Assembly: GCF_002113885.1 (NCBI RefSeq)
Contig: NW_018408786.1
Span: forward strand, 1,223,136-1,287,135
Reading direction: 5' to 3'
DNA: 64,000 nucleotides
Origin: Mizuhopecten yessoensis
Taxonomy: Eukaryota
The position numbers were made by a program, and so were the translations under genes. Shown one piece after another: positions 8,970 through 35,719 of the stretch; positions within the stretch are counted from its first letter, which is position 1, and every line of letters begins with the position of its first letter. The notes under the pieces are model-generated. The model was given only the letters and a program-made list of their open reading frames with translations. It was not told the origin of the DNA and ran no database searches.

Positions 8970-9033
8970 CTTTCTTTGTGGAGCCAATGAACGCCTTATA
9001 TTTCTGTATGATCTTTTCCTTGATGGAAACCAT
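8970..9033 (-). CDS. Candidate alternative start exon (MVSIKEKIIQKYKAFIGSTKK-)
   Basis: gaaATGG start, 21 codons + 1 nt, AAG|GTAAAG donor in phase 1; basic, amphipathic-looking peptide. Confidence 0.5.
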
Positions 9034-10799
9034 TTCTGACTGTGCGTTATCAGGACATGTATCCTTGCCACATAGATAATTACTTATATTCCGTTATGTA
9101 CATGTCTACATGAAGTCCATTGTCCGGTATATCCTGGTCCACCAGCTGGCTGTCGGGTATTACATGTAGTTATCTATATATTACCAAACATAACATCCTG
9201 TCATACCACGAGCCCGGCCAATGTATACAAATAATGGCGCTTATGTATATTCCACACTTCTCAGAAAGTACCTTGAGGAATCACAAGCTCCTCAGATGGT
9301 GATTCCTCAATTTCAGGAATGTACAAGCTTCTGAGTTGGAGATTCCACAATTTCAGGGATGTACAAGCTCCAAACTTTGTGATTCCTCAATAATTGGGAT
9401 GTAGAAGCTACAGGCTTGGTGTTTCTATATCAGACTGGACAAAGCTTGGTAATGATTTCACGATATTTGGAATGTATTAACTCCTGACCAGGTGTTCCCA
9501 CGACAAAAAAGCTTGATGATTTCACCATATGATATTCTGGTTTTAGTCATTCTACACAAAACTTATGATCTACATGAACCCTGTGTAAGTAAGTCAACAA
9601 TACCACACATCTTACACAAAGACACTGGAATTATGTGATTTATGAAGTTAACAAAATACTCCATAGGCGATCACAAGGACTTTAAATATGGTTGGTTGAA
9701 TACACTCTGAATCCCAGAACCAGTAAATATCCATCACAGATTCTTCAAGGTTATCGTAGCATAGAGAGGTCGTAAAGAACTTGAAACATGTACGTTTTCA
9801 TCAGGATCACTTCTTGAGAGGAAAAAAAGTTGAGAAACTCGGAGATCACAGAAACTTGGAACTATGAATGCTGGGAAACTGTGTAGACACACTAAACACC
9901 AATCAGCCGACTTGTCGAGTAAAGATTATTAGTCACTTATCTCTGCCTAGTCAATCGCGACTCTGCATCCCATTCCGCAACGCTCATCACAGTGATTCAG
10001 AAAAGCTGGGGGGAAAAGTCAGATTCTACCTCGAATGCCAGCTGCCGAAACCAAAATTATAAAACACACTTCTCCTTGAGGTTGTATAAATATCGAAATT
10101 AAAAACACAAGTTTTCTTCGGTGAAAGTCGAAATCAAATACACCAGCCTCCCATTGTAAAAGGCTAAATCAAAAACGTGAGCCGCCTAAGTAAAACGCTT
10201 GTTAGGTGCTATTTAGCAAGCTATTAGGAGGAGGTGCCAATGGACTGGAGTGCCAGATGGTCTGGAGCATGGTATCCCCATCACAGAACGATCATCACCC
10301 TCGGAGGGGCGGCCAGGCGAGATGAGGGAGGCAGCCTCCGTACCCACAGCACCAAGGTAAGTACTCTTTATCATACCCACTGCATACAGCATGCATGCAG
10401 CCAGGCATTGTGTGAATGGGTGTTGTATACTAGATGTGTAGTGTATGGGAGAATTAATTACCTTGCCCTAATGTTTGACATGTGCAGCATGCATTTAGCC
10501 CTTAGTTCAAACATTTCCTCAAAACACGGTATATGAATCTTTATCAAATACATATGACTTATGTAAACTTTATCATTACTTTACCAAAAAATATTTTTTT
10601 TGTTCCATGTTTTTCAGTATCAATTGAGAACCATATGGGCACTTATGTAAAAACATGTGACAGGCCTGACGAAAGTGAACTGCACTAGAGTTTCTTATTC
10701 CATATGACGTTTGTGTGCCAGTACAAGAAAATTACAAATATCATCAACACATGGTGGAAACGACCAACAAATTATAGTTAACTAGTTGACTGTAACTTC

Positions 10800-11285
10800 A
10801 ATTAGCATACCAGGGCAATCTTCTTCGAGGCAATTATAACCCCAACAGGCAATTATCACTCAGCTGGTAATCCTTGGCAATTGTAATTAGGAATTATAAT
10901 CAAGGCAATCTAATGCAATGTATAATAACCCAGACAGACAATCATAACTCAGTTAGCATTATAACTTAGGTAATCTAATTAGCCAATTATAACCCAGGCA
11001 GGCAATTATAACTCATCTGGCAATACAAGGCAAATAAATATAAGCAGGAATTATAACTTAGGCAATTATAACCCAGGCAGGCAAGTATAACTCATCTGGC
11101 AATACAAGGCAAATAAATATAAGCAGGAATTATAACTTAGGCAATCAGAGGCAAATGTAAACAAGAAATTTAACCTTGGCAATCCAACGCAATTATAAGC
11201 CAGACAAGCATTTATAACCTGGCAATCAGGAAGTATAATGTTAACCTAGGCAATCCAAGGCAATTATAACCCAAGAAATTATAGC
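10800..11285. repeat. Degenerate short-period repeat built on ggcaattataac(c/t)
   Basis: Many caattataac/ggcaatc motifs, with an internal ~80-bp duplication around 10985-11145. Confidence 0.75.
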
Positions 11286-14200
11286 AAGCCAACTAACTAC
11301 CAGTCAAGTCTGTGATATCTCCTTGTATTGTCATAATACAGATGTCTGTCATCACAAGTTCTCACTCCAAACAGGAAACAGAGAACATCAAAGATATCTG
11401 AGGAACGGTTCATTCTGTTAATTAGTGGTCAGGCTTGAGAGACAGACAGTGATGTTGTGAGTGGTCGAAGTAGTGCAGATACTGTAGCTTTTATCATAGT
11501 TCAAAGACTGCAGAGATCTTTTTAACATACATAGGAATCCTGTTAAGTTTGACAAGTTTTACCCATTTAAATCTGTCAACCAGCATGGCTACATTCACAT
11601 AAAGTAGCAGCTTGCAGTAATTATGTAACATCCTGACCTAGCATTACAGTGTAAATGTTTACTTATCATTCCAAGCACTTACTTAGACTGACACACACAA
11701 CAGTTCAGTTGGTGCTTGATGTTGAACTGTCCATGTAACAAAACTAACTACAAAGTAACCTGTCTATACCAAACCCTGTATAGTAGGGAAACCTGTATAA
11801 AACTGGTCTTCAACATTATCCAAACACAGATTATGCAACTTAAATCTGTGTAGCCTAAAAACTGCCTATTCCCACGGGAAAAATTGAATCTTTCACCTCC
11901 TTGTGTGGCGAAATGGGCAAATCTCAACCCTAAAAACAAGATTCTTCAGTTGTCAAATTGCACACTTGCCAAGGTTTTTGACAATTTATTACTATATTTT
12001 ATTTCCTGTGGGTTGAATACACCTACATCATTATGATGCAGTTATGTGTTTTCACCTTCAGGAAATTACTGTTATTTCCTGGACACAAACCTGACACACG
12101 AGGCGTGGAAAATAGATATCCATTCATTCATCATTGTATTTACATTTTTTTTACATATTTTCCATGCTCTGATTGGAATGACATATGATGTATACCCTAA
12201 CTTAATTTTGTTATTTTGCATAAACATTAAAACGGTTGCTTTATATTTTAACCTGTTGAACGTTTCAACAGATTTTGTGGGGCATTCAAAACTGTAGCTA
12301 TATAAATTACATGTAAATTTCAAAGGTTCACCCGATATTAAAAACCTATAACTAAGTTACTTAGATTCCAAAAAACCTGCGTTTGATGCTGTGTAATCGT
12401 ACAAGTATGCACGCCGACCAGGAATGAACTACTCGGAGATTAGACCCGATGAAATCTTAGCCCCCTTTATCTTTATGCTTTCCCCTTTCAATTCTCATAT
12501 TAATCCAACAATCGCCAGACTTTTTTCCTCCAAACTTTATCGTGTTTGTTATCAGCGACATATACTGTAACCCGCCAAGCGGAATAAAGAAAGCACTTGA
12601 TTATCACTCATAATCCGGATTGTGTTAACAAAGTCGGGCCAAAGTTGTCAGATGATGAGTTCATCATATTTTAAAAAGCTTTACATTTTATTTTTTTTGA
12701 TGAGCGATGAAGCCTTAATATGAACTACTGTTACAATTCCTTTGTAATGTGTTACATTCCTCACAAGCCGTAACGTAAGTACGGCTATCTGTGTGTAGCG
12801 CTCCTTACATGTAGCAAAGTAAGCAAGACTATCTATAATTCCTGTTTGATACGACAATGTACCGAGAGAAGGGCTAGGTGATGCAGTCGGAGATAAAAGC
12901 TTGGTAAACTTTAACACTGAGGCCAACAGCAGCTGATGTAACTAAACCATCCCAGTGTTAACATGGATTCAGCTTTTAAAATAAAAAATAAACCTTATCT
13001 TACTAAAATCATCCTACCATTAACATTGTTACAGGATTTTTGAAAGTTTTTGTCCATTACATTCACTTTTTAAAAAATAATTGTTTTACATTGTCCTGGA
13101 TTTCCTAGTCCACAGTCGGAGTATTTCAAAAACATCAGATTTCCAATTTTATTCACAGTACTAATAGTCATCAAACTACAAGCCATATTTCAGAATTTGT
13201 CTAATTCAGCTGCTTTCTCATATGAATAACACTGTAATAAATGTTACTGTTTCTGTGTTTAATCTTAACAAAAGTGCAGCCATACATAGGTTAAGGTTAT
13301 AGGTTAGGATAAAATACTTGCAGGAGGGGGGAGATTAATTTGATATCCTGTTTTACTCTCACTTCCTAATTACCACAGCTTTACATTAGGTGCATTGCTT
13401 TAATTTCCCTCATTGTTAATTGTCTTAAGATTCCTTAGATTCTCTGCTGTCTGTCAAGTTTCCTCTGTGACCAAGAAAACATCCCATGTACCCTTAGCCA
13501 TAAGCTATACTCATACATCATGATACAATAAAGTGCCCCTCCAACTCCTCCCAGTACAGATGAAGTGTTGGGAGGGGGGGTTAAGTATTTACACAAAGTA
13601 CCTCATCGCCTCCCCCTCCCCTCCCCCTCACACCAATTATGTACATTACACATAGCAAATAGGATATTCTCCCTAGCCCTAGTCTTCTGTAATAAACAGA
13701 CTAAGGACACAAATCACATTTCCCCCCACTAGCCAAAAAATCTAAGATTTACATTTTGTCAACTCATCACTACAGTTCTACCTTGAGCTTTGTGTGTATA
13801 TGTATACAAGCCTGTACAATATGGATGGTAAGAACTCCCTTTGAACACTGTAGGTACACCAGACTCCAGTCTATAGGTGCCAGATGGTTAGGGTTAAAAG
13901 CGGAGAGAAAGCATGTCTTAGACATATCACAGTAAGTGAAGGAACATATGCTTCTCTGTGTAACCCTAGCATGACTTATACATTGTATACACTACAACTA
14001 CACCAGGGACTCAAATGACCTGTATCTAGGTCTACCACAGCCTCCTCAGGTGATTCCAGTTCACAAACAGACATTATGTTACTATCATCATGATCATATG
14101 TAATCTCTTTCTCCTATTCTGTGTTATGATGTTTTTGCTCAAGAGATTCAAATCCATTGAGTCTAAACATCTTATTGACGATTTAACTTGAAAGCCCATA

Positions 14201-14385
14201 ATCCTGTTCAGAGTGTCTCCTTAGTTATATACAAGACATCATATAATCCCCCCCCCCCCCAAAAAAAAAATTTAAATGACTATATTCATGTTTTCTGTTA
14301 ATACAGTGGGTAATTTCAGTTCAGCTCATCATGAAGAACATCTGAGAACAGGAAGTGATACGTCCTTTAAGTGCTGGGCTGGCCG

Positions 14386-14538
14386 CAAGCCTCTAGAAAT
14401 CCCTTAGTAAGAGTATTATGATACATCTACATGATACAAGACTTTAAGAACTGACCACAAGCCTCTAGAAATCCCTTAGTAAGAGTATTATGATACATCT
14501 ACATGATATAAGTCTTTAAGAACTGACCACAAGCCTCC
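14386..14538. repeat. 72-bp tandem duplication (about 2 copies)
   Basis: caagcctctagaaatcccttagtaagag... starts at 14386 and again at 14458. Confidence 0.9.
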
Positions 14539-15376
14539 AGGAAGCTCTAAGGCAAAAGTGGAAAAGATACCACATTTACCACTAATAAGACTATGATGAA
14601 GTACAGCAAACTGTTTATAATTAGCTATGTCTCCTCACTGAGAAAATGTTTCTATAATTTAACAGTTTTGCACTGCAGATATATTTAGTGAATTTTGTAC
14701 TGAAGAGTTCTTGTTGGGAAAAGGTCAGGTGTAGCTCATTGCAGGCATTATAAACAAATGGTTTTTTTCAAAGAGGATTTAATATTAAGATGAATCCTTT
14801 TTATGCCGTAAATAATTTCCCGTTAATAATTTGCCATAGTGTGTGGTCTATACCGAACATATCGTCCTGACCCCAGTATTGGGCCGTCCTCGCTCAATAC
14901 AGCTCTGACAGGTAAAAATCATATTACATGATAAATGGGAATTTCTGTGTAATTTAAAAAGTATTTAAAACCAGGCATAGGTCCCTCTCAGATATGATAA
15001 CATTGTTTTGGTCGGACAAACTTGTAAAATTACACATAATATCTTTGGAATCTTTGAATGCTTCAAGGAAGAGTGGACCTAGCCACCAACCACGCAGGGT
15101 AATACCAAAACACCTGTACAGGCGAACTTACCAAGTCTTCAAAATCTGGAGGGAGATTTTGAACTTACATATGTTCAAAATCAGTAGATTTTCTGTACAT
15201 TTCGCAATTTGCTTAAATCATTGCAGAGAACAATTTACCAGGTAAACTATCACACATATCCGATTTTACCATTTGATTAATAAATTTCATCGACTCTACC
15301 ATTTCCATAAAACATGAATAATTTTAAACAGGTGTATTGTATTTTTATGGTATGACAGGAAGGTCACTTCAGGATA

Positions 15377-16107
15377 CCCTGCCCTCCCAGACAATGACCT
15401 AACCAGCAAGGGCCAGTCCTGCCCTCCCAGTCAATGACCTAACCAGCAAGGGCCAGTCCTGCCCTCCTAGACAAGCTAACCAGCAGAGGCCCGTCCTGCC
15501 CTCCCAGACAATGACCTACCCACCAGGGGCCAGTCCTCCCCCCCTAGACAAGCTTACCAGCAGAGGCCCGTCCTGCCCTCCCAGACAAGCAAACCAGCAG
15601 AGGCCAGTCCTGCCCTCCCAGAGAATGACCAAACCACCAGGGGCCAGTCCTGCCCTACCAGACAATGACCTAACCACCAGGGGCCAGTCCTGCCCTCCCA
15701 GACAATGACCTAACCACCAGGGGCCAGTCCTACCCTCCTAGACAAGCTTACCAGCAGAGGCCCGTCCTGCCCTCCCAGACAATGACCTAACCAGCAAGGG
15801 CCAGTCCTGCCCTCCTAGAAAAGCTAACCAGCAGGGGCCCGTCCTGCCCTCCCAGACAATGACCTAACCAGCAGGGGCCAGTCCTGCCCTCCCAGACAAT
15901 GACCTAACCAGCAGAGGGACAGGCCTGCCCTCCCAGACAATGACCTAACCACCAGGGTCCAGTCCTGCCCTCCCAGACAATGACCTAACCACCAGGGGCC
16001 AGTCCTGCCCTCCCAGACAATGACCTAACCACCAGGGGCCAGTCCTGCCCTCCTAGACAATGACCTAACCAGCAGAGGGACAGTCCTGCCCTCCCAGACA
16101 ATGACCT
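15377..16107. repeat. GC-rich 39/40-bp minisatellite (gtcctgccctcccagacaatgacctaaccagcaggggcca), about 18 copies
   Basis: Direct tandem units with two interleaved variants. Confidence 0.95.
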
Positions 16108-17042
16108 ATTCAGCAGGGATGGTTCTGCTCTGACCTGGTATGACATTGGGACCCTTTGATCAGTACACATGTGTGGGGTCACAGTGTATCATATATATTA
16201 GTCAGTGTGTATTACAGTGTACCCTGAGGAGAGAACATCACCTAATGTATATCTAACATGTCAGACAGCCCCAAACTCTGGGGCCTCCAGGCCTCACATC
16301 ATCAGCCTATCTCAAACAACATCTACTCTCTTCTGCTTCCATAATAAATTCATTTTTTGTACAATTATTTCATGCTTGAGAGTGAAAGAGTTTATTTTCT
16401 AGATACTATACAAATGAATAAAATTCAACATTCCTTGTCTTTATTTGCATGGCTGTGTGTAGGTAGGTTATCTGAGGCTGTCAAAAATACACCCTTACTA
16501 TATTTTCGGTTAAACCTGTGTTCTGCTACACTGAAACTGACCAATCTGCTGTTGCTGTTGTTGGCTGACCATAACAACCTCTTCTAACCAACCTTAGCCT
16601 GTTGATGACTGACCGTTACACCTACCCCCTACCCTACCCCCCCCCCCCCCCCCCCTCCTCCATGACTAGTAAGGGTGGTACTGACCATCCTCACTCTGCT
16701 CCAGACTGACCATTACACCCATCTCCCACCTCCATGACAAGTAAGGGGGTGGTACTGCCCCAGACTGACCATTACCCCTGTCTGACCAGACAAGTGCTGG
16801 CTAATGATCCTGTAAACGTGTTTGTATATAATATATACACCAGCTGGAGTGTATCACTATCCCCCTATAGATAGATACAACTTTAACCCTTACAAACACG
16901 GGGAACATATCATCTCTCTCAGATCAATTACTGACATCAAGTTTTAGACATTCATCCTAATTATTTAAGTCAGAATGATTTCCTTGTAAGCTAGGTAATT
17001 GTATGGTTAAAGAAATCATTCTATATCTTCACCATTGGCACC

Positions 17043-17262
17043 TTCTCAAGCCGACAAAAAGCATTACTGAAAACTACTGACAAGAAAATTTATTATATTT
17101 CTCAAGCCAACAAAAAACATTACTGAAAACTACTGACAAGAAAATTTACTTTATTTCTCAAGCCGACAAAAAACATAACTGAAAACTACAGACAAGAAAA
17201 TTTACTTTATTTCTCAAGCCGACAAAAAACATAACTGAAAACTACAGACAAGAAAATTTACT
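17043..17262. repeat. 56-bp tandem repeat, 4 copies
   Basis: ctcaagcc recurs at 17045, 17101, 17157 and 17213. Confidence 0.92.
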
Positions 17263-18585
17263 GTATTACAATGAAACAAACTATCAGAAAAGTTTACTCC
17301 ATGATGCTGCATCTGTAATCTTGATAAAAAATACTATGCAAATATTAATAAAAATACCAGTAATTTTGTTTGTTGAAATTTGGAATTCTCTGGAGTTTTC
17401 TATTTCTAATAGTAGTGTGAATGTTTACTTTTCCCATCTGTTTTTTTTTTTTTTTTAAATTAAAAGTTTTTCTAATCTCAAAATGTAAGCATCTGGTGAT
17501 CCCTGATAGCTAAAATTTTATTTTATTACCGCCATTTTTTGTTAAACCTAATATTTTTATGCAACCTTAACCATTTTATTTTCCTTGAAGGAGTGTTCTA
17601 TACCTTTGTTAAATTTTCTGCATCAAATACCAGAGCCAATTTCCTCGATAGCTAGGTTCTCTAGGTGGGTCATCCACTACTGTCCAGACGGCCAAAGCGC
17701 GGAACCCAATACACTAGCTGCTTCAATCATTGGTTACATAAAACCCCTTAATTGCAATACAGGGAAACTTGAAACGTACAAAAATTGTCAGGCATTTGCC
17801 AATGACAATGGGTGCCAGCTCTGTAGAGATCCTCCCATTGTCTGGGTGGTATGGGATAGGTCTGTACCTGTACCCCGACTCCACAGGTACACAACCAACA
17901 CTGTACTTTCTGTAGGTCAAACTTAAATCACACAAAAAAACACCCAGAACATGGGTCGTAAATACCAACGACTTGAGATAACAACAAATTCTGTTACATT
18001 AATTAATTACCTTTATTAATTGTTTATTTATTGATCTTATATTTCCATCCCTGGTATGTAAATATCTAAATTAATGTTTCGAATAACTGTTTTTAATCAC
18101 CAATGCCCCTAATATAAGAACTCGAGATTATGTCTTACTGGTGTTAAATGACCATAATCAGAATTTCCTGACATTTCCCCTGCTACACCCAGTAAAGTAC
18201 TGCAGACCTTGGAATTCTCTTCACACTACAGTGAAATATAAACAAACCACTAGCTTCAAGTTCATAAATCACATGAGACCACTGCGTTTCCTTTGAACAC
18301 CAAGTATGTTTCCAGACTAGTTTATATTTCACCATATATCAACCTTACAGATGATCTTACTCAAGATTGGTTGAAGTACCCTTTTTCCAGACAGAAAACT
18401 TACAAATCATGCACTTTTGCTGTCAATGAAATCTTCATTTTTGAAAATCCAAACCAATAAATTTTGATCCCTTGTATATTTTTGACTATAAGTCGCCTGA
18501 TACACAATATAAAAATCTGAGACACAAAATATTTGTCCTTAAAGTTTGAGGTCACTAAGGACAAATATATACAATTTACAGAATA

Positions 18586-18676
18586 TTTACTCATTCAGCC
18601 CTGAAATTTCATAATGAACTATTCCAACCTTTGAATGGGAAGAGTTCAAATGTGTCTTCAGGGGTGAATGAGTTAA
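18586..18676. mobile_element. ~90-bp TTAA MITE, copy 2
   Basis: Same TIRs and core as 7321-7410. Confidence 0.85.
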
Positions 18677-19936
18677 AATCTGGTGCTGTCCCATCTGTAA
18701 ATCTAATCTGTAAAAATTACATACACTCCTACCAAGCCAGGTTCATATCCTATCTATTCATATAGAATCAAAAGAAAATTGATTCGGACACTTCTATACT
18801 ACTATCAACATTGAAAACCCCACAAAATGTATCCAAAACCTCTTCAGTAGACTCGTTTAAAGCGTCCACAAATATGATATAGCTCATTACCATATTTCTA
18901 ACTCCCTTAACCCCCGAATGTATTTTGATCTATTTCTATAGAAAACCTGAAATAAATATGTATATATATGTAAACTGTATAAGGTTTCAAAAGTGATACT
19001 GAAAGCCAGCACTATGTAAACTGTCAAGAACATCAATGGGTCCAGGCTGTACCTTGGTATAGGTTTGACCAATCCACACTTGACACGAAGGTGTTGACAC
19101 ACAAACCCGACACCCACGTCGACCAACGACACCCAATAACACACAAAACGGGGCCAATTCAAAATCAATTGAATTTATAAAGGAAATATGCCACTGAATT
19201 GAAAACAAGAGTTAGCTATTCAATTCCATTCATCAGCAGTTTCTTTTGATGAACTGTTGTACCAATATTTTTGAACTATTTCCGTTGCGCCAGTATGGAG
19301 CCCGCCTTAGAACTCAATATTGACATGTAGGTCCAATATCAGACGATTTCGGATCAACACACTGATCTAGACGTAGCGGTTACCTAAGCTGTTCAAGAAT
19401 TCCTTTCTCAGATTTACAAGGAGTTTGGTTTTTTTTATGTCATTCACACGAAGTGCCTTTTAGTGTAAATTATTTCCAAACATCCAGCTAACTCTTTGTA
19501 TTCTACCACTAACAATAAGTGTGTTGTGATTTCTTAAATATATACATTTATACAAACTGCCCAATCCCTAAACACCATAATGACCAGTGGGTCAAACTTC
19601 TATGGGTGAAGGTGTCTATTTCTCGGTCAAGTTTGGTTAGTGGGCTCCCTATTTCAGAGGCTACCGGACTATGTATGTGTGGATTTAGGTACAAATATTT
19701 ACTGAACTTTGAATGACATGATGACAGCTCTGGCCAAATGGGAGCTACTTAACCCATACTGTACAAGTGGCAACTCCCACCTCTTAGGTCACAGGTTGAC
19801 AAGGAGTTCTTGGGAAACGTTTTGGAATAGTTCTGAAGTAGTGCTTCTAGCTAGCCAGATTTCTGCAAGTCCAGCATCACCTCTGGAGTAGTACTGCTTG
19901 CCAGATTTGATGAAATAGTACTACTATGAATTGAGT

Positions 19937-20346
19937 TCTGGAGTAGTGCTGCTAAGCCAGGAACTATGGAGATGTGCTACAAGCCAGGCTTTCTGGAGAA
20001 GTGCTACGAGCCAGGCTTTCTGGAGTAGTGCTGCTAAGCCAGAAACTATGGAGAAGTGCTATAAGCCAGACACTATGGAGAAGTGCTATAAGCCAGACAC
20101 TATAAAGAAGTGCTACGAGCCAGAAACTATGGAGTAGTACTGCTAGCCAGACCTATGGAGTAGTACTGCTAGCCAGACCTCTGGAGTAGTACTGCAAGCC
20201 AGACCTCTGGAGTAGTACTGCTAGCTAGACCTCTGGAGTAGTGCTGCTAAGCCAGAAACTATGGAGAAGTGCTACGAGCCAGGCTTTCTGGAGAAGTGCT
20301 ACGAGCCAGGCTTTCTGGAGAAGTGCTACGAGCCAGGCTTTCTGGA
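19937..20346. repeat. Composite ~27-30-bp minisatellite (ctggagaagtgctacgagccaggcttt and variants)
   Basis: Several unit variants arranged in blocks. Confidence 0.9.
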
Positions 20347-23452: not shown

Positions 23453-23509
23453 CTGGAGCCAAGAATGTCATATATGATCAGGAAAGTCACACACCCAGGG
23501 TCACATGAC
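23453..23509 (-). CDS. Candidate 57-nt exon containing a start codon (MTFLAP-, ATG at 23471)
   Basis: Good acceptor ctgtccccctacag| and donor CCAG|GTATGA. The ATG is in phase-1 register with an upstream in-frame TGA. Confidence 0.4.
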
Positions 23510-24152: not shown

Positions 24153-24352
24153 AATAATAATAATAATATACAGCATTTGATATAGCGCCATATCTAGCTA
24201 ACATAAGCCACTCTAAAGCACTTTACAGTACATAGATATTTTATACAGTCAATACAATAAGCATATATATTAATCAATACAATATTGAGGATTTCGCAGG
24301 AGCTGCCTTATCAGGCGCTAACTACTAGTCCTATGCCACCTGGCTAATACCT
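24153..24352 (-). mobile_element. Retroposon 3' end with L2-like tail and (ATT)n terminus
   Basis: The minus strand reads gtaaagtgctttagag...atggcgctatatcaaatgctgtatattattattatt, resembling L2-tailed SINE ends. Confidence 0.55.
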
Positions 24353-27300
24353 CCCTATGTATGTATGCCTGCATGTGTGCTGGAGATGTATTGTGTTCTG
24401 TTTGTAGTCATGGATGATGCATTTAGAGATTTTGCATGTATATTATATTGGTTGAAAAAATTGAAAACGGTGAAATGTCAAATTCGGCAAAAACAGAAGA
24501 TGGCGTCAAAATCTGACTACATCAGAGCATACCCAATGTAGACGATGGAGACGTCATGGTAAGGGCCTCAATGATCAGAAATATAACATGAAACAAATTT
24601 CAATGTTAGAGAGTTTAACTTGTATTTCACGCAGACAGAAATATTCTTGTAAGTTGTCTATGATGTATCCGAGTAGGATTCACAAGTATATACAATTACT
24701 CGACAAACATTCCAAGAATTATTTCCTCCACCAACCAGTCACACCATCTTTATTTTCCATCAGTGACCATCCACTTTAAATCATGGTCTATACATCTCAC
24801 TGTCTATTACCCGAGGTCAGGAGCTGGTCAAGATTCTGTCTCTTAGCTATATAGTAACACCATGACTGGACACCAGCTATATCAGCGGTATCTGTTTCTT
24901 TTGGCCCTGGTTCCCCAGGCTCCAGGTGATTAGGCCATTGTTAATAATTACATTGGAAAGGTTCAAAACAGTTCAGCCAGAACAGGAGAACACATTTGTA
25001 CGTATATGAGCAACACCCGAGTGGTACGTCCTCTACACCTTCCATTTAAACTTTTACTTGCTCACAATCTCATATATCCTAAGCTTGTCATTTCCTCTGT
25101 TTTTATTTGTGTATTTCGGCCCGATCACAGTATCAGGTAGTTTTAAAACCGCTCCAATTTCTCTGGTCAGTTATAGCGCTGATCATGAGTATGTGTCCAC
25201 ACCTGTGAAGCTTTGGTGTGGTCAGTGGAGGATAGCCTTACCCTATAAACTGACCATCTTTTTTTCCAGGTGTGGTGTCCATTTTCATTATCACCTCCTA
25301 CCATTGTGGGGGACATAGACACCCTTTCACCAAGGAACTGAGCCTGTAATTCTACACAAATAACCCCCCAACACCAGGATCAGTGTTACCATAAAATGGT
25401 CATATCTAAGTTCTAACAGATTGTCACTCATCTGTGAATCTGTGCTAAAACTTCCCTAGTCCTGTACCAAGTTAATATCTACTGTTGAGAAACCGAGGGG
25501 TACTGTATGAACATCTTATCTGAAGGCTCAACTTTCACTTACAGTTACACACAAAAATACTTTAAAAGAAATTGTTGAAAGCTTGGGTGGGCAATCTTAA
25601 TGAAAAAAAAATACATTGCACAAATTTTATCGAATTACCATCTAGTCAAAAAATACTAGAAGAATATTTCACATTTCTCCATATTTCTATTTTTTAGAAC
25701 GTATGTTTACTCAATTCTGTTATCGCCACACAGAAAACAGGTTTGAAGTGTTCGGTAGCCGGAATGACGGGCAAAATTTCTGTATTTACTTTTCGAGAAG
25801 AATTATTGAGGTAGCCCTAAAAAGTTCAGCAAATACAAGACCTTTTACGGGTATACTTGGAGGGATTTACACCGTATTGGCAGTGAACGAGGACCAATAA
25901 ACTACCCAAGTACAATCCACACACAATACACAATCGTATTGGTATTTTTAAGATTTGGTCAACACTACAAACTAACAGTAGAAGAAAGTCGTCCCCATGT
26001 TCCCATTTTCATTCCCAATATTGACCCAAGGGATCGTAGCTCTAAGGTCTGTTGATACTGGGACGGTAGTAAACACCCTGGGAACATCCAGATACAGATG
26101 CTAATTTAAGCCATGTTTTCTTGGCTGACAAATATTTTGAAAGTTAATTATTCTGTCCATTCCGCAAAGCAAACAGGCGGATTGAAAGGTCAACATGTTG
26201 TACTCAAATTGATACTGTAGAGCCCAAGATGTTATTTAATTAACAAATTTTGTAAATTTCACATCAAGTTAACAAAAACAAATATCTGTGAATTTGTCTA
26301 TTTGAACTGTGACTTATTCAATTGATCAATTTTAGCGAGATTAGCTACCAGATAAATGTTACTACACCTTATACACAATTAAAAAGTTGTAAGAAAAGTG
26401 ATGTCTTGCCCGATGTGGATTTTCAGGTTCAACGACTATTTTAAACATTTCAGGTTGGTCACACCTAGGAAGGCTGACAAAAACATCCTTTGCGCACAAT
26501 TACGCTGCAAATTTCATGACAAAATGGCTCTCTATGGCCCCACAGCAGGTTATTTTTCATCAAACTCTATAAAATTGTCCTAAAGGTTGGCGTATCAGGG
26601 AATCCTTAATAAATTAATGTACCATGACTCGTTCACCAACAAAAACCTAGTTCATCCCCCACCTCGATCTAATCCCACAGAAGGTGTATGTACGCACGAC
26701 CATTTACATTATTATCTGACAAAGTTACCTACGCAGACCCTTCTAGCAGATAAACTTCCAAATCACAAATATGGAAATGACATGAATTTTCCATTCATTA
26801 TTCTTTAGTCTAAGTAATTATATACACCACATAATTCATGGAAACGACCAACCACTGTAGACCAGGTCCAATTTCAAACATGATAATTTAATTACACAAT
26901 TTCCTTAAAGACATATCAACTCGAGATTTATGCAAATCTTATTAAAACATGACGGTTATTTTTGATCGCCTTGCTCTACATACAAAATAGATTCAAAGCT
27001 GAACAGAATAATTAAATATAAAGCTGAACAGAATAATTGAATATTATATAAAGTCCAAGTATTAAAAGAAAAAAGAAATTATTTTGAACGTAATACTTTG
27101 ATTTTCGTTTTGAATCGCAATTGTAGTATGAATTTCAGGTAGTTTGCATATCATGACGGGGTTGAATTTCTTTGAACTCAGTAGCAGGCTAGTTTGGCAG
27201 AGAATGAATGACAAAGTCAACTGATCAATTACAGCTAATATTTAATACATTGTCCGAAATTCGACCCCCAAAAAGAGAAGATTTAAATTTGAAAATTACG

Positions 27301-29390
27301 AAAACACCAAACAGTCCTAATTGAGTCTGATGTGAAATATGTCTAGCGAGGTCTGTGGGAATAATTATTCCTGTCAGACCTAATATTTCTATTGATAAAT
27401 CATTCCTCTGTGTATATCTATATATATGTAATCGGAACATATGTACCTACAGATTAAGATATTTGTATAAGTAGATACGCACTTCTAGTATTTATCCATA
27501 TCTATATGGGCATTGATGAGACCTGTATAGGAGAAATCAAACCCTGACAGATTTATTTGAAATTTTCCCTGGTAGCGTATTGATAGACGTCTCCACTGAC
27601 GTCTATACCACGTATAAGCTTTCAGATCCATTGATCACGTATGCCATAAATAGAAATTAGCGATTTGATACTTTGATATACATTAACGTTTCTCCAAAAA
27701 CCTGTCTGATGAAAATTATTTGTACAATGATCCGACCGATGAGCTTTTACATTCCAGTTTCCGCACCATTCTGAGCCGAATTGAGCAGGTATTAGATGAG
27801 TATAGATCTGTATTTAAAGGCCTGTAGTTCGCCCCCAGGATTAGATTATATAGGTTAAACACCATTCCAGCTTGAATTGAACTGGAATTATAGATACAGG
27901 TCTGTTTGTAAGCTTTAAGGTTAGAGATTGACCATCTATCTAAGATATCGTATGTAGATCTACCAACTATCTGTAAACAGAGTTTGGATGACAAAGACAA
28001 TTCTGTATTACTCGTTGTAACTGTGATGTCACGGTAAACTTTAAGATCAAATTAACGTAAGATATGCTGGTGGAAGCACTGTCAGTGTGACCCAGATCCA
28101 ATCGGTGGGAAATTAGCGTCGATTTAAATGTCGTATCGCCACCAAACATCCGAATTTTTTTATAGAGAAGGTTTTCAAATGAGAACATTCTACAGCACTA
28201 CATGAAATGTAATCACGCTGTTATTTGCCATCAACCCTTTAATTTAACAATAACAGAGAGATATTGGGTAAACCTAAGCCCCAGATAACACTATATATAA
28301 TCAGTGATCAATATTTCCCTCTGGCAAATCTCATCGTCCCCACGTATTATTGTTTTGGTTTTTTAAATAGAGCAAATTAAAGGACATGTTGACATCTGTT
28401 GTCTGACTCAACATGATCCATCATGAAATAGTCTCAACGAAATATTACACATGTCATGTAGTACTATATGAAAGCCTTTAACAGTATCATGCTTTGACTG
28501 AAAAATATGTGAAAATCTAAATATCTCGTTTTTGTAACTGAGAGCTACTTTTCTGATATCAATTGTCAATTTCAGGTCCTAGCAAACATTTGGAGCACAA
28601 TGCTGAAACTATGTACTCATGAATACATTTATTTTTTTTGTTATGAAGTTTTGTCCAATAACATGGCGACTGGCTACATTTGGTCAGTGAGAATTAGTAT
28701 ATCTCCAGGCTGTCCCCATCACAGACCCTGGATGCCATACATACTGGGTATGATACCCCCACTTATCATCTAGAACAAATAATTTGTCTAAGATTTGTTA
28801 GCAGTGGTGATAAGTCGGGAACACTATGATCACCAATGCCTTGGCTGGTACCCAACAAAAAACCGTTACGACATCCCCCTAAGCCTGTTTGTTCCGAGTC
28901 GGAGATACCTGACGGTGGGCCACGATTCGACACTCAGGAATTATCAGGCGCCACTTCACCTATCACCCATTAGTAATATATCCCTTGATTACACCTCAAC
29001 AACCCAAACTGATCCTTTCACCATATGCCACCACTGGCAGATATGTTTCTAGACTCGTTACCGTACAATTTATTTCAAAACAGTAAATGACATCTTTTGT
29101 ATGTGGATACTATGTTAAATACTTGACATTTTAACTAATATCCCTCTGTCTTGGATGCCCACTTGTATAATACAGTGGCCCGGTATAATGCTTATAAACC
29201 TACACTCGGTCTACCCTGTCGATAATTAGCTGGCTGCACCCGTTATCTAATGGGGTGTAAGACCTCAATCATGACAGTTCCGCAAGTGTCAAGCGTGAAG
29301 ATGTTGTCAGTATACCCACAAAACCACAGCCTGTCAATAGCGTTTTCTATACCGATACCTCCTACAATGTATTACATGTCGCGGAAATAA

Positions 29391-30240
29391 TGAGGCCAAG
29401 AGATCTCACCCCTACAGGTATTACTGTGTCCCTGAAGTCATAAGGCCAAGAGATCTCACCCCTCCAGGTATTACTGTGTCCCTGAAGTCATAAGGCCAAG
29501 ATATCCCACCCCTACAGGGATAACTGTGTCCCTGAAGTCATAAGGCCAAGAGATCTCACCCCTGCAGGTATTACTGTGTCCCTGAAGTCATAAGGCCAAG
29601 ATATCCCACCCCTACAGGTATAACTGTGTCCCTGAAGTCATAAGGCCAAGCGATCTCACCCCTACAGGTATTACTGTGTCCCTGACGTCATAAGGCCAAG
29701 ATATCCCACCCCTACAGGTATAACTGTGTCCCTGAAGTCATAAGGCCAAGAGATCTCACCCCTGCAGGTATTACTGTGTCCCTGAAGTCATAAGGCCAAG
29801 ATATCCCACCCCTACAGGGATTACTGTGTCCCTGAAGTCATAAGGCCAAGAGATCTCACCCCTGCAGGTATTACTGTGTCCCTGAAGTCATAAGGCCAAG
29901 AGATCTCACCCCTACAGGGATTACTGTGTCCCTGAAGTCATAAGGCCAAGAGACCTCACCCCTACAGGTATTACTGTGTCCCTGAAGACATAAGGCCAAG
30001 AGATCTCACCCCTACAGGTATTACTGTGTCCCTCACCCCTACCTGGCATCTAATGTTCCTGAAGTCATGAGGCCAAGATGTCTAACCCCCTTCCAGGCAT
30101 TGCTGTTTCCCTGAAGTCGTGAGGAAAAGACATCTTGCCCCTACCTGGCATCAAATATCTCTGAAGCCATGGGGCCAAGATGTATAAGCCAATACATCTC
30201 ATCCCTAATGCACAGTACATGTTCCTGAAGTCATGAGGCC
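29391..30240. repeat. 50-bp minisatellite (taaggccaagagatctcacccctacaggtattactgtgtccctgaagtca), about 13 good copies plus a degenerate tail
   Basis: Exact 50-bp period from 29391 to ~30030, then diverged units. Confidence 0.95.
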
Positions 30241-31048
30241 AGTTTGCCTCAATTTATCAACTAAGCCTGACATAACCGTTTTCTCCATTGAATTATAGGA
30301 TCTTCACTTCTGAAAATTGCCTTCTGTCATGTTTGGCTGCCACAGGACACTACAAACAAGACACTCTGGCCTTGCACCCATTTTTATGCTGTTTTTGTTG
30401 GCAAACTTGCAATCTGCAAACAAGCTTTATAGAAATCTAAAGACAAAAATAACAACTTTTGTTTTACCATGGCAAGCACCAACAGCATTTGAAGTTGAAA
30501 TGGTGAGGTTAATTGAAATGTGTGACAGATTCATCAAGGCAGTAGTAGGTTCATAACGTTAGTAGTAAGACCTTGAGCCTGTCACAGCATGGTGCCAGCG
30601 GTGTGGAATCTTCTGACAAGGTATGACCCTTGTACAACAAAATTATGCATTAAAAAAAGGCCAAGATCTTTAATCGGAGTACAAAACCCAGTTTCTGATA
30701 ACACTAGAGCTTTAACTGATGGTAGTCAAATTTCAATTGATTATCAGTGATAAGGCGTGTACTATATTTCAACACTGAAGTATATACTAATACACTGTAG
30801 AATAGACCCACTGGCACATCTCCCAAGTTTTACCCTGGCGTTTTAATTATAAACCCAACGGCTGTATGTTAGAGTAAGCTAAACAGACAGCCAGCCCATC
30901 ACCACACAGACTAATTTGATTACAAACCTAGGTGGTGGAAATATCAACATGAGAAAAACACCTATATTGATTTAAGTTTGATGACCCGGACATCTTCCAC
31001 TTCATTGGTGACTTGAAAATATTGAATCCAGTAAATGTAAAAAAACAA

Positions 31049-31670
31049 ACATTGATATTTGTCACCAGTGTAAACATTGATATTTGTCACCCGTGTTAAC
31101 ATTGATATTTGTCACCAGTGTTAACATTGATACTTGTCACCAGTGTAAACATCAATATTTGTCACCCGTGTTAACATTTATATTTGTCACCCGTGTTAAC
31201 ATTGATATTTGTCACCAGTGTAAACATCAATATTTGTCACCCGTGTTAACATTTATATTTGTCACCAGTATAAACATTGATATTTGTCACCCATGTTAAC
31301 ATTGATACTTGTCACCAGTGTTAACATTGATACTTGTCACCCGTGTTAACATTTATATTTATCACCCGTGTTAACATTGATATTTGTCACCAGTGTAAAC
31401 ATTGATATTTGTCACCAGTGTTAACATTGATATTTGTCACCCGTGTTAACCTTGATATTTGTCACCCGTGTTAACATAGATATTTGTCACCAGTGTAAAC
31501 ATTGATATTTGTTTGTCACCAGTGTTAACATTGATATTTGTCACCAGTGTTAACATTGATATTTGTCACCAGTGTAAACATTTATATTTGTCCCTAGTGT
31601 AAACATTGATATTTGTCACCCGTGTTAACATAGATATTTGTCACCAGTGTTAACATAGATATTTGTCACT
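31049..31670. repeat. 25/26-bp minisatellite (acattgatatttgtcaccagtgt(t)aa), about 24 copies
   Basis: Direct tandem units. Confidence 0.95.
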
Positions 31671-32879
31671 AGGATTACCTATAGTTCTGTGAAGACATCA
31701 AAGTCTTAGATTATTTTATAATCTAGCTATGGAAAACGGAAACAAAGATTCTTTCCCCCAATAAATGAATTTTGATCATGCAATTAACAGCATATACATT
31801 TTATATTTTTGTTTTTACTGATCATTTCTGGATTACTTAAATCTATTACAGGGATTACTAAAACACCCTACCAATTAAAACAGCTGCTAACTTTTGAATA
31901 TTTTATTAATATCCTGTAAGAATTTATACAGAGTAAAGCCAGCCCTACATGCCTATGCTAATTCTGGGCAGGTGAGACCGTTGAAAGCAGTACCTCAGGA
32001 CAATTGAATATTGCACCGTTCCCCCAGGCTGCCTACAACTCTATCATACCTGGACAACGCCAGATATGTGTCCTAACCTTCACAGCAATGTCATTCCAGT
32101 TAGGTCTAATTGAGTCTGTTACACATTTGATTTGTAGTTATCAATGTCAATCACTGCGGGCCAACAACCAGCAGAACAAAAGCTTTGAAGCGTCCTTTGC
32201 ACATTTTTGCGGCCATCGACGTTTCTATCACGTAATATGTCGCTGTTCTTAAATCCTTGTCAACAAAATGTATCAACACATATTCTATCATGCTAAAACT
32301 TCACATTTCTGCATAATTAATTTCCATGATTGATAATACAATAGTATATTATTCCATGAATATTCATGAATCATTTGATGTTTATTAACTCGCTTCCTTA
32401 TTTGCATCAAAACATGCCCAATTACGCTAGTGAAGAACATTAGTTATGCAATTAGGTTTTCATCGTGATACTAAATTGGAATTAATCTTAATAACAGTGC
32501 AGATGACTAATTAAATATATATATATACATCAAAAACACTAACATGTGTATATATATTAATATATATACAATACACTACGAAGTATTTGTATGAATATAT
32601 ACTCTCGATATTACTATGTATATGTAAATATATATCTGATACATATGCGCCTGTGTACTTGATGTGCTGCGGATAAAGAAATGTTACAAGGCACACGTCT
32701 CTAAAATAAAACCAAGCAGATGTTTCTTTGAAGGTGCTAATTAATTAGCAGACAGATGCCGAAATTCTGGATGTGACGTTTATGTATGGGTAAACATGAC
32801 CCTGGAGAAATCACAGCTTATTGTGTGTGGCTATACATAAGTATTGTAAAGGTCACCTGATCCCTAACTCATCCCTAAA

Positions 32880-33115
32880 ACAGAAACCATTCCAAATGGT
32901 AAGATAGAAATCATCCTAGAAGAGTCAAATAGAAACCTATCTTGAGGGTCAGATAGAAACTATCACCAAGGGTCAGGGAGAAACCATCCCCAAGGGTCTG
33001 AGGTAAAATATCCCAAGGGTAACATAGAAACCATCACTGAGGGTCAGCAAGAATGTCACCAACGGTCAGCTAGAAACAATGCCTGAAGGTCAGTTAAAAC
33101 CATTTCCCTATCGGT
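32880..33115. repeat. Highly degenerate ~26-bp repeat (gggtcagatagaaaccatc...)
   Basis: Recurrent ggtcag/agaaacca motifs. Confidence 0.6.
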
Positions 33116-33277
33116 CAGTCAGGAATATATGGGTCAGTAATTAGCAGCCAAAACATTAGAACTGCAGACTACTTCGGATCTGAAAGCAACTTTGTCATCC
33201 ACTTCATCACATAAACATTGACTATCATCTTGAATAAATTACTTTGAAATTCCTTGAAATATCATTATTGAACTTAC

Positions 33278-33446
33278 TCTTTAATTTGGACGTCTTGGGT
33301 GTTTCTGGAAACTGGAAGACATTGTCATTTTCATCGATGTCTTCAAACAATTCCTTGAAGTCATCAAACGGCGATGTGTAGTGCATTAACGGTGATGACC
33401 AAAGGTCTCCGTTGAGTTCTTCAGAGGGGGATCGATCCGAACTCAT
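33278..33446 (-). CDS. CLASP: Candidate alternative first coding exon of CLASP (MSSDRSPSEELNGDLWSSPLMHYTSPFDDFKELFEDIDENDNVFQFPETPKTSKLK-, 56 codons + 1 nt)
   Basis: Protein-like acidic ORF from ATG 33446; donor AGA|GTAAGT falls exactly in phase 1. Confidence 0.7.
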
Positions 33447-33895
33447 TCTCCCTCACTCAGAAGCTTGACATTGATGAGAAATGCTATGATACCATTTTCT
33501 TTTTCATTTTTGCTTGAGCATCATAAATTTACCACCAACCATGTACGATACACTGAATCCAAAAATTTCATTGTGTCACCAGAAATCCTGTCGATGTGGA
33601 GCATATCCCATACATTAATTCCCGAATCACATTAATCCGACGTGAACATTAACCCGACAAAGAACTTCTCTGAACTGCTGTTCTCTGTACATCATTAATA
33701 CATTACAAACTCTACGATGCAGAAGGAGAAACAATTTTGAACTTTTCACTTTTTACGATTTTTCACATTCTCCACATTTCACGGGCAATTTCATTGCACA
33801 ACCACAGGTCTGAATGACATCTATCACGTACAGTGTCGGTGGATATCTCCATACAACACAGAATACACACACTTACTTCCAATGCTCTCACATAC

Positions 33896-33926
33896 CTCTT
33901 ATTACCAACCAGCACCATTTATCCAT
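33896..33926 (-). CDS. Candidate alternative start exon (MDKWCWLVIR-)
   Basis: ATGG start, 10 codons + 1 nt, GAG|GTATGT donor in phase 1. Confidence 0.4.
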
Positions 33927-35083
33927 AATGTTAACACTGACAATATATATTTTTTCTTCTAAATTCCAATATTTTTTTAACCCTGGGTCAGCACTTGACT
34001 GACTTGTCTGCGTCACCGATATCTGACTAAACAAATAATCACATGTATACGGAAATGGATCGGCTCCAATTATGTTGGTGAGAAATTTAAACACAATCAC
34101 TCATCTCCTGACATGATTATGAAACATTAGAGGGCGATATGGTATACTTATTTACAGTTCACCATGCCCCAGCGATCCACGACCGACGTGGACTGATGAA
34201 AATCTGGTATGTAAGGACATGATATATGAAAAGCTCCCTCCAATCTGTGTCCGTTTGATTATCCAGGTAAAACGGTATTGAACAAGGTCCGATACACAGT
34301 TCGCTGACAATGGTGGATTCCGACCTCAGGCCATGTTGAGGTTAGAGACATTTAATCCACTGGAATGGTGCCATGATTAGTATTTATACAGCACAGGGGC
34401 TTCTACACACGGTCACAGGTCCCCGTCCTCAGCACTCTATAGGCAGTTATACACACTATAGTAGATAACAGGTGTAGAAACTCAGTCACCAGTCACAGCA
34501 CACACATGTCCAGTTGACTAATTAGTTAATGATCTAGTTGTAATTAGCACTGACCCGTATGGTCAGCTATAAGGAGTTAGATAAAGTTGGCCAGGTGTTG
34601 GGTAGGTCCACCCCCTAACATAGCTACCCTGTCACTGACTCGCCAGTGTTTGTATACAATCATTATACACACACATGTCCTCATCATTATACACCTGTCT
34701 TCATGTATACCTTCTGTGACGACTTGTCTACATGCACAGGTAAAGTACAGGTGTAACACACTACATCAACAAATCAATGACATTTCACCTGGCTGGAATC
34801 TTACTAGTAACCTGATAACCTTACGTACAATAGACACTCAAGTCATCACTGTAATGGTCAGCTGTACGAAGGTTAATCACGGGTACAGGTACGTCACAGG
34901 TGAAACACGGGTATACTCTTCAGGTTAACACATAGGTAATGAACAGAATTGCAATTAGTCCCCGAAAATCTGGAGAATTCCAATTTTCACCCGAGACACT
35001 AGTAATGCTGAATTTCAAAGATTCATAAATCGTATGTTAACTTTGAGGTAATAAAACAGTCGTTGTATCTCCACATTTCTTAC

Positions 35084-35105
35084 CTGTAATGTCACAGGTG
35101 TTCAT
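35084..35105 (-). CDS. Candidate short start exon (MNTCDIT-), possibly within exon 35135-35084
   Basis: ATG, 7 codons + 1 nt, strong CAG|GTAAGA donor; upstream ttttcag acceptor at 35136. Confidence 0.35.
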
Positions 35106-35508
35106 AGCATCACAATGAAAATTTTAACCAGGTCACTGAAAACTTGTCCTAAATTTCCTGTATCCTGGATCCAGGAGTGGTCAATTGACTGTTCACAAAG
35201 TGGACATCGTTGGACAGTCCTAAATAGGGCGGTAAATGAGACAGGAACTAGGCAGTGTTAAATGGTAGAGTCAGGTGTATCCCTGCGTGGCGATATTCCC
35301 TACCTGTCATCTCAGCCCAGGCATATCACACACCTGTCATAACTGTTGCAGTATTACTCAGGTGGAGAAAAACAGGTTCAAATGTCAGCTGGCATTACGA
35401 AAAGCATAAATCCTGCAAATTATTCCACAGCACCTAAAGGTTTCCCTTCTCCTCAACACAGTGTTAGGAACGTCAGCTATGCTATAGCTATATAGCCAGC
35501 ACACTTAC

Positions 35509-35719
35509 CAGTATATTTGAAATATTTTGAATTGAAAATTAAACTAACGGCAGGATGCTTTCTCCATAATTCAAGTGTTACACGTACATTCCCAGACTTT
35601 ACACTACAACGGGACTTAAACATTCCCAGACCAAACACATGTGAGACTTGTCTTATGGTGTTACACAATATACGATAAAAACTATTTTGAAGTTCGTCCT
35701 TGACCTTGAAGCATGACAT
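35509..35719 (-). CDS. CLASP: Candidate alternative first coding exon of CLASP (MSCFKVKDELQ...SKYFKYT-, 70 codons + 1 nt)
   Basis: ATG at 35719 with an open frame to a consensus donor ACTG|GTAAGT in phase 1, compatible with the 4146 and 3228 acceptors. Confidence 0.6.

What the first reader, a model, noticed from the sequence alone, without database searches (positions are those of the whole stretch)
8970..35719. Array of phase-1 alternative start exons in the 44-kb CLASP intron: a variable N-terminus cassette replacing TOG1
Seen: at least six minus-strand ATG-initiated frames end at a GT donor in phase 1, the phase needed to join the APSRG linker exons. They are 35719-35509 (70 aa), 35105-35084 (7 aa), 33926-33896 (10 aa), 33446-33278 (56 aa), 23471-23453 (6 aa) and 9033-8970 (21 aa). 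The peptides are mutually unrelated (acidic, basic-amphipathic, Trp/Cys-hydrophobic). Known: vertebrate CLASP2 has beta and gamma isoforms in which TOG1 is replaced by a short alternative N-terminus at about this point, with beta palmitoylated. Inference: this lineage expanded that arrangement into a multi-promoter 'variable exon, constant region' system that targets TOG1-less CLASP to different places or tissues. The short candidates could be chance; the 56- and 70-codon ones with perfect GTAAGT are the strongest.
Basis: partly seen in the sequence, partly recalled or inferred. Interest (0 to 1): 0.85.

Follow-up and report, generated by a model that had tools for sequence, protein, structure and literature searches.

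The report
Two alternative CLASP start exons, not six
The long intron of the scallop CLASP gene holds two real alternative start exons, one already annotated and one unannotated but shared with mussels, which give forms lacking the first TOG domain as in vertebrate CLASP2 beta and gamma; the other four proposed exons look like chance.

Summary
The window is Mizuhopecten yessoensis CLASP, on the minus strand. A 44-kb intron (48123-4147) separates the last TOG1 exon from linker exon A. All six ATG-to-GT phase-1 frames exist as written. Such frames are very common, though: 545 phase-1 GT donors can be reached from an ATG in this intron, with no excess over other phases or the other strand.

- **Frame 33446-33278 (56 aa):** supported. 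It is the exact N-terminus of RefSeq isoform X14 (XP_021373914.1), spliced to exon A. Its core motif (LWSSPLM..SPFDD[FY]K[ED]L) is conserved in bivalves, gastropods and an octopus. A few RNA-seq reads cover about 34300-33278 and stop at the donor.
- **Frame 9033-8970 (21 aa, basic):** probably real. It matches the N-terminus of a Mytilus edulis CLASP model. Mussel genomic contigs show the same ATG, the same phase-1 donor and the APSR linker exon downstream. No scallop isoform I saw includes it, and I have no scallop RNA evidence.
- **The other four frames:** no homologue, no annotated isoform and no spliced reads.

This is an old three-start arrangement like vertebrate CLASP2 alpha/beta/gamma, not a lineage-specific variable-exon array. 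The scan has not reported it on other DNA.

The parts
33278..33446 (-). Alternative first coding exon, acidic: 56 codons plus 1 nt, with a GTAAGT donor after 33278. It is the N-terminus of RefSeq isoform X14.
   Evidence: It is identical to residues 1-56 of P0152 (XP_021373914.1), which continues into exon A. It is conserved in nine mollusc species. It is single copy in the genome. RNA-seq depth falls at the donor.
33447..34300 (-). Transcribed stretch upstream of the acidic exon's ATG. It is probably the 5' UTR of one long first exon, and its upper limit is approximate.
   Evidence: About 7 reads in X19 (all with the first mate on +) and about 15 in X24 cluster between 33278 and about 34300. 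Depth is zero from 34300 to 35100 and from 32300 to 33100. That it is a UTR and that the start site lies here are inferred, not shown.
8970..9033 (-). Probable second alternative first coding exon, basic: 21 codons plus 1 nt, with donor AAG|GTAAAG. It is absent from the scallop isoforms seen.
   Evidence: It is the best six-frame match in the whole window to the N-terminus of Mytilus edulis model P0194: score 56 against a shuffle maximum of 49, 0 of 500 shuffles reaching it. Mussel contigs L010 and L011 have the same ATG and the same phase-1 donor (AAGAAAG|GTAA), and L011 has the APSRAGG exon 1.2 kb downstream. Scallop-mussel DNA similarity is confined to the exon.
4036..4146 (-). Linker exon A: 111 nt, phase 1 in and out, containing the STIP motif. 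It is the acceptor used by isoform X14.
3100..3228 (-). Linker exon B: 129 nt, phase 1 in and out. It follows exon A in every annotated isoform seen.
48124..48197 (-). Last TOG1 exon. Its donor is in phase 1 and it joins exon A in the TOG1-containing isoforms.
4147..48123 (-). The 44-kb intron that holds both alternative first exons, along with minisatellites and dispersed repeats.
35509..35719 (-). The 70-aa ATG-to-GTAAGT frame. It is unsupported and probably a chance ORF.
   Evidence: It has no similarity to any of 225 CLASP-related proteins. It is single copy. The only reads are about one pair in X24, and their binned depth lies on both sides of the donor, which suggests they are unspliced. 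One chance frame of this type is expected.
35084..35105 (-). The 7-aa frame. Unsupported.
   Evidence: No protein hits. Depth is zero in bin 34900-35099, and the neighbouring bin holds only part of the single X24 pair. It is one of 545 chance-type donors.
33896..33926 (-). The 10-aa frame. It lies inside the transcribed stretch upstream of the acidic exon, so at most it is an upstream ORF.
   Evidence: RNA-seq depth is present in the bins on both sides of 33896 in X24, and no joint is listed. It has no homologue.
23453..23471 (-). The 6-aa frame. Unsupported.
   Evidence: No homologue and no annotated N-terminus. It is a chance-type donor.

Best explanation
The scallop CLASP gene has three alternative 5' starts. 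The upstream start gives the TOG1-containing, alpha-like protein. Two further first exons lie inside the 44-kb intron that follows TOG1. One is acidic, 56 aa, at 33446-33278. The other is basic, 21 aa, at 9033-8970. Each begins at its own ATG and ends at a phase-1 donor. Each is presumably driven by its own internal promoter and splices to linker exon A at 4146. The products lack TOG1 but keep the SxIP linker, TOG2, TOG3 and the C-terminal CLIP-interacting domain. By analogy with mammalian CLASP2 (Aher et al. [quoted passage not shown] The short isoform-specific N-termini would then add targeting or partner binding. Shown: the acidic exon and its splice to exon A, the conservation of both peptides, and the conserved donor phase of the basic exon. 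Inferred: the promoters, the use of the basic exon in scallop, and every functional statement. The other four frames are chance ATG-to-GT frames in a long AT-rich intron.
For: Gene identity and exon map: tblastn of CLASP proteins and source names. Acidic exon: P0152 (XP_021373914.1, isoform X14) begins with exactly this peptide and continues into exons A and B. The same N-terminal peptide occurs in TOG1-less CLASP models of Mytilus, Mactra, Potamilus, Nucella, Biomphalaria, Physella and Octopus, and inside a Pinctada model. Eleven positions within the peptide are invariant. RNA-seq reads cluster at 33278 to about 34300. The X24 depth of 0.11 in bin 33100-33299 equals 22 bases, which is what one read ending at 33278 would give. 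Basic exon: it matches the Mytilus edulis P0194 N-terminus at the same position relative to the APSR linker, and 0 of 500 shuffles reach the observed score. The mussel genomic contigs share the ATG, the phase-1 donor and a downstream linker exon. Most codon differences between scallop and mussel are synonymous or conservative (TCC/TCT, ATC/ATA, AAG/AAA, GAA/GAT). DNA similarity is limited to the exon. Chance level for the remaining frames. They have no homologues. Functional frame: PMC6035287 and PMC6373834.
Against: I have no junction read for either exon; the single reads call gave only about 45 reads, and no joint or loose end passed the three-read threshold. The X19 depth of 0.24 in the bin at the donor is not exactly two reads ending at 33278, so some unspliced RNA is possible. 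The basic exon is missing from all 12 scallop isoforms seen and from the RefSeq Mytilus isoforms retrieved. Its only protein-level support is one non-RefSeq mussel model that may be ab initio. The two Logan ORFs read through the donor, so they are genomic or unspliced. No promoter or transcription start data exist. The four rejected frames were tested only against annotation, homology and, for three of them, a handful of reads from two runs. Tissue-specific use is therefore not excluded.
Confidence: 0.78

Rival explanations
1. One reading: six or more alternative first exons form a multi-promoter 'variable exon, constant region' array that expanded in this lineage.
For: All six frames are in phase 1 and have usable donors.
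Against: Phase-1 donors show no excess over other phases or the other strand. Four frames have no homologue or annotated isoform. Reads appear to run unspliced across 35509 and 33896. The two supported exons are ancient and unrelated to each other, not a recent expansion of paralogous exons.
Confidence: 0.04
2. Only the acidic exon is a real first exon. The 9033-8970 match with mussel is a conserved non-coding element, or an exon of something else that a mussel gene predictor happened to translate.
For: No scallop transcript or isoform contains it. The mussel model CAG2246835.1 is not RefSeq. The Logan ORFs read through the donor.
Against: The conservation starts at the ATG and stops at the GT donor. 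The phase is the one needed for the next exon in both species. The position just upstream of the APSR exon is shared. The differences are mostly third-position or conservative changes. This pattern fits a coding exon better than an enhancer.
Confidence: 0.15
3. The acidic exon is an internal cassette exon included after TOG1, not a first exon. The Pinctada imbricata model places it that way.
For: P0146 has the peptide at residues 257-303, after TOG1.
Against: In scallop an in-frame TGA lies two codons upstream of the ATG. Eight other species' models start with this peptide. RNA coverage continues about 850 nt upstream without a visible acceptor. The Pinctada protein is a 'hypothetical protein' model.
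Confidence: 0.03

Closest known systems
Vertebrate CLASP2 alpha/beta/gamma isoforms (Akhmanova et al. 2001, as cited in PMC6035287 and PMC6373834)
   Same: One gene gives a TOG1-containing form and two TOG1-less forms, each with a short isoform-specific N-terminus that joins the protein just before the Ser-rich SxIP linker and TOG2. The scallop has the same three-way layout.
   Different: I could not test homology of the mollusc peptides to the vertebrate beta and gamma N-termini, because no tool gave me a beta sequence. The mollusc basic peptide has no cysteine, so beta-type palmitoylation cannot apply. The acidic exon, at 56 aa with a strongly conserved motif, had no counterpart among the few non-mollusc N-termini retrieved.
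RefSeq model XP_021373914.1, 'CLIP-associating protein 2-like isoform X14' [Mizuhopecten yessoensis]
   Same: This is exactly the product of the 33446-33278 exon joined to exon A.
   Different: It covers only one of the six proposed exons. It contains no equivalent of the basic exon.
Mytilus edulis CLASP1_2 model CAG2246835.1 (P0194)
   Same: Its N-terminus aligns with the scallop 21-aa frame at 13 invariant positions, and it joins the APSR linker exon in the same way.
   Different: It comes from another species, and its transcript support is unknown. RefSeq Mytilus isoforms with this start were not found.
Clustered variable-first-exon loci (protocadherin and UGT1A type)
   Same: Several first exons upstream of shared constant exons, each presumably with its own promoter.
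   Different: Those arrays consist of many paralogous variable exons. Here only two are supported, they are unrelated in sequence, and both are ancient.

Membership tests
CLASP (CLIP-associating protein) gene | Sequence homology across TOG1, TOG2, TOG3 and the C-terminal CLIP-interacting domain | tested here: met
   tblastn of the Haliotis CLASP P0007 matches exons from the window through loci L006, L007, L004 and L008 at 54-80% identity. Scallop RefSeq CLASP isoforms map at 93-100%. Precomputed Pfam CLASP_N PF12348 is recorded on P0152.
TOG1-less CLASP isoform made from an alternative first exon (CLASP2 beta/gamma type) | The first coding exon lies in the intron downstream of the last TOG1 exon and has its own ATG | tested here: met
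   The ATGs at 33446 and 9033 lie inside intron 48123-4147. A stop lies two codons upstream of 33446.
TOG1-less CLASP isoform made from an alternative first exon (CLASP2 beta/gamma type) | It splices in frame to the first post-TOG1 linker exon and keeps TOG2 through the C-terminus | tested here: met
   This is met for the acidic exon: P0152 reads from the peptide into exon A, exon B and TOG2, 1381 aa in all. For the basic exon only the phase and the mussel model P0194 support it.
TOG1-less CLASP isoform made from an alternative first exon (CLASP2 beta/gamma type) | Transcript evidence: junction reads or cDNA | tested here: inconclusive
   About 22 reads cover 33278 to about 34300 and drop at the donor, but no joint or loose end was listed.
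TOG1-less CLASP isoform made from an alternative first exon (CLASP2 beta/gamma type) | An internal promoter or transcription start site | not testable with these tools
   No CAGE or ATAC data are available. The upper edge of coverage near 34300 is only suggestive.
   Only 2 of 6 are supported. The rest are at chance level and have no homologue or annotation.
Both exons are single copy or ancient.

The most novel reading that the evidence does not exclude
The three-start layout (TOG1 form, acidic form, basic form) may be ancestral to molluscs and possibly homologous to vertebrate CLASP2 alpha/beta/gamma. The invariant acidic motif (LWSSPLM..SPFDD[FY]K[ED]L, which includes an LIR-like acidic-aromatic-x-x-Leu core) may be an uncharacterised partner-binding or auto-regulatory peptide that takes over or changes the role of TOG1 in the short isoform.
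Probability: 0.2. Interest if true: 0.55.

Novelty: new member of a known kind. Interest (0 to 1): 0.3.

Why it matters
In mammals TOG1 releases CLASP auto-inhibition, so TOG1-less isoforms are the regulated forms (PMC6035287), and they are enriched in neurons (PMC6373834). Molluscs have the same alpha, short and short layout, with two conserved isoform-specific peptides. This suggests that the split into constitutive and regulated CLASP forms is old. It also provides two short conserved peptides that can be tested directly for localisation and binding partners. For the scan there is a practical lesson: ATG-to-GT phase-compatible frames in long introns are abundant, so only conservation or transcript evidence separates real first exons from chance.

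Tried and rejected
- Pfam scan of single exon pieces found nothing useful because the pieces are too short.
- Reads: runs X22 and X23 gave no reads on the stretch, so they are no test. X19 and X24 gave about 45 reads in total. The only joints and loose ends listed fall in the 25-bp minisatellite at 31048-31669 and are repeat artefacts.
- The search for homologous proteins with P0194 residues 1-42 found no other long protein with the basic N-terminus. The word index and length filter make this a weak negative.
- The look-up of encoding contigs gave no DNA for P0194, P0195, P0183 or P0223, and the Mactra gene range was too long. I therefore could not compare orthologous introns for the four unsupported frames.
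- The idea that the basic peptide is an amphipathic helix is not supported. Its hydrophobic moment is 0.30-0.41, and 12-34% of shuffles reach that value. It is simply Lys-rich, with net charge +5.
- From memory, a WSSP-type motif may occur elsewhere in vertebrate CLASP. No W[ST]SP was found outside N-terminal exons in the proteins held, so I dropped this lead.
- The Haliotis and Patella type of alternative N-terminus, which joins inside TOG1, has no counterpart in this window.
- I did not search a joined (spliced) model of the basic isoform. I used database proteins by id instead.
Full report
**1. What is there**

Each starts with an ATG, has a length of 1 modulo 3, and is followed by GT; the donors of the 70-aa and 56-aa frames are GTAAGT.

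The gene is CLASP. A Haliotis CLASP (P0007) and the scallop's own RefSeq isoforms map exon by exon to the minus strand:
- TOG1 exons lie at 51794-48124.
- Linker exon A is 4146-4036 (111 nt).
- Linker exon B is 3228-3100 (129 nt).
- A 39-nt RRRRS microexon is 1988-1950.
- TOG2 and the rest of the gene continue in the loci fetched downstream.

The last TOG1 exon ends in phase 1, and exons A and B are phase 1 in and out. The intron is 48123-4147, about 44 kb. Source names and the contig length of 1,800,141 identify the genome as Mizuhopecten yessoensis.

**2. Is the pattern more than chance?**

As a set, it is not. The minus strand of the intron has 545 distinct GT donors in phase 1 that an ATG-initiated open frame of at least 5 codons can reach. 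It has 15 GTRAG donors in phase 1, against 16 and 16 in phases 0 and 2 and 9-13 on the plus strand. The other five strand-phase combinations have 0, 1, 0, 0 and 1. About one such frame by chance is therefore normal. Donor strength does not separate the frames that turned out real from the rest.

**3. The 56-aa acidic frame (33446-33278) is a real first exon and is already annotated**

I first ran a representative search with a TOG2 exon. I then ran a region-restricted homologue search with the Haliotis protein. This returned twelve scallop CLASP proteins. Eleven start with the TOG1 N-terminus.

The twelfth is P0152 (XP_021373914.1, 'CLIP-associating protein 2-like isoform X14', 1381 aa). It starts with exactly the 56-aa peptide, then has a Thr codon spanning the junction, and then runs through exon A, exon B and the rest of the protein.

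The same peptide heads TOG1-less CLASP models in:
- Mytilus edulis (XP_071154272.1)
- Mactra antiquata
- Potamilus streckersoni
- Nucella lapillus
- Biomphalaria glabrata
- Physella acuta
- Octopus bimaculoides

It also sits inside a Pinctada imbricata model. In a nine-species alignment, L15, W16, S17, S18, P19, M21, S25, P26, F27, D29 and L33 are invariant. The exon is single copy in the genome.

Two of the four raw-read RNA runs gave reads on 30500-36499. Outside a minisatellite, nearly all of these reads fall between 33278 and about 34300. They amount to roughly 7 reads in X19, all with the first mate on +, and roughly 15 in X24. Depth is zero on both sides of this stretch. The X24 depth of 0.11 in bin 33100-33299 equals 22 bases, which is what a single read ending at 33278 would give. 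No joint passed the three-read listing threshold, so this is consistent with splicing at the donor but does not prove it.

**4. The 21-aa basic frame (9033-8970) is probably a second real first exon**

Among the TOG1-less proteins, Mytilus edulis model P0194 (CAG2246835.1) has a different N-terminus. It is a Lys-rich peptide joined directly to the APSR linker. This peptide aligns with the scallop frame at 13 invariant positions.

Its best local match in all six frames of the 64-kb window is exactly 9036-8971, ending at the donor. The score is 56, against a maximum of 49 in 500 shuffles.

A profile search found two short Logan ORFs. Their contigs, L010 and L011, are mussel genomic DNA. They show the same ATG and the same phase-1 donor (AAGAAAG|GTAA). 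In L011 the APSRAGG linker exon lies 1.2 kb downstream.

Between scallop 7-11 kb and the mussel contigs, the only DNA similarity is the exon itself. Most of the aligned codon differences are synonymous or conservative. That is the signature of a coding exon under purifying selection.

The weaknesses are these:
- No scallop isoform I saw contains the exon.
- No RefSeq mussel isoform with this start was retrieved.

**5. The other four frames**

None of 35719-35509, 35105-35084, 33926-33896 and 23471-23453 resembles any part of the 225 CLASP-related proteins collected. None is the N-terminus of any model.

- About one read pair in X24 gives depth in the bins on both sides of 35509, which suggests it is unspliced.
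- Coverage is present on both sides of 33896, which lies inside the transcribed stretch upstream of the acidic exon's ATG. That ATG is at most an upstream ORF.
- The 23471 frame was tested only against annotation and homology.

I treat all four as chance frames. Use restricted to a tissue not sampled here is not excluded.

**6. How it most likely works**

The gene has three alternative starts: the upstream TOG1 form and two TOG1-less forms with unrelated short N-termini. In mammals TOG1 relieves auto-inhibition by the C-terminal CLIP-interacting domain. Isoforms without TOG1 need a partner such as CLIP-170 to become active (PMC6035287). CLASP2 beta and gamma lack TOG1 and are enriched in neurons, and beta appears membrane-bound (PMC6373834).

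By analogy, the scallop short forms would be the regulated CLASP pool, and the conserved peptides would add targeting or partner binding. This step is inference.

The basic peptide has net charge +5 but no unusual helical amphipathicity. It has no cysteine, so beta-type palmitoylation cannot apply. The acidic motif includes an acidic-aromatic-x-x-Leu core that resembles an LIR. That resemblance is from my own knowledge and is untested.

**7. Comparison and novelty**

The layout matches vertebrate CLASP2 alpha/beta/gamma. It does not meet the defining features of a variable-first-exon array, which needs many paralogous exons that are all used.

The acidic isoform is already in RefSeq. Two things appear to be new:
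- the basic exon in the scallop, which is unannotated there;
- the observation that both peptides are conserved, the acidic one across three mollusc classes.

My two literature searches were aimed at the vertebrate isoforms and did not include mollusc terms, so I did not test whether either point has been published.

**8. Limits and compliance**

- I had only one reads call and one run search.
- No orthologous intron DNA was available apart from two short mussel contigs.
- The N run 8504-8640 was not touched.

Noticed in passing
window 4146-4036 and 3228-3100: All 12 scallop CLASP isoforms seen carry linker exons A and B in tandem. In the current annotation they are therefore not mutually exclusive.
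   Followed up: partly
window 1988-1950: The 39-nt RRRRS microexon is present in most isoforms but absent from X5 (P0160) and from the original genome model P0164. It is therefore a real cassette exon in the annotation.
   Followed up: partly
window 7321-7410, 18586-18677, 37214-37305, 45099-45190, 49978-50068: A dispersed repeat core of about 92 bp occurs in at least five copies at 88-91% identity, in both orientations. It is probably a SINE or MITE fragment.
   Followed up: partly
window 15378-16118, 29393-30033, 31048-31669, 53013-53516, 59556-62002: The window holds large minisatellite arrays with units of 25-50 bp and up to 38 copies. The 25-bp array at 31048-31669 attracts RNA reads with odd joints, which are repeat artefacts.
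   Followed up: partly
window 8335-8856: The masked N run 8504-8640 sits inside a 36-bp tandem array that begins about 110 bp 3' of the basic exon's donor.
   Followed up: no
proteins P0007 and P0115 (Haliotis), P0140-P0142 (Patella): Some gastropod CLASP models have another alternative N-terminus, which joins inside TOG1 at the ISVNGLEVLCL exon. No counterpart was found in this window.
   Followed up: partly
window 33602, 33651, 33851, 33876, 33881: RNA reads differ from the assembly at five positions (C>T and A>G) in the stretch upstream of the acidic exon. These are most likely allelic SNPs. Editing cannot be judged without DNA from the same animal.
   Followed up: no
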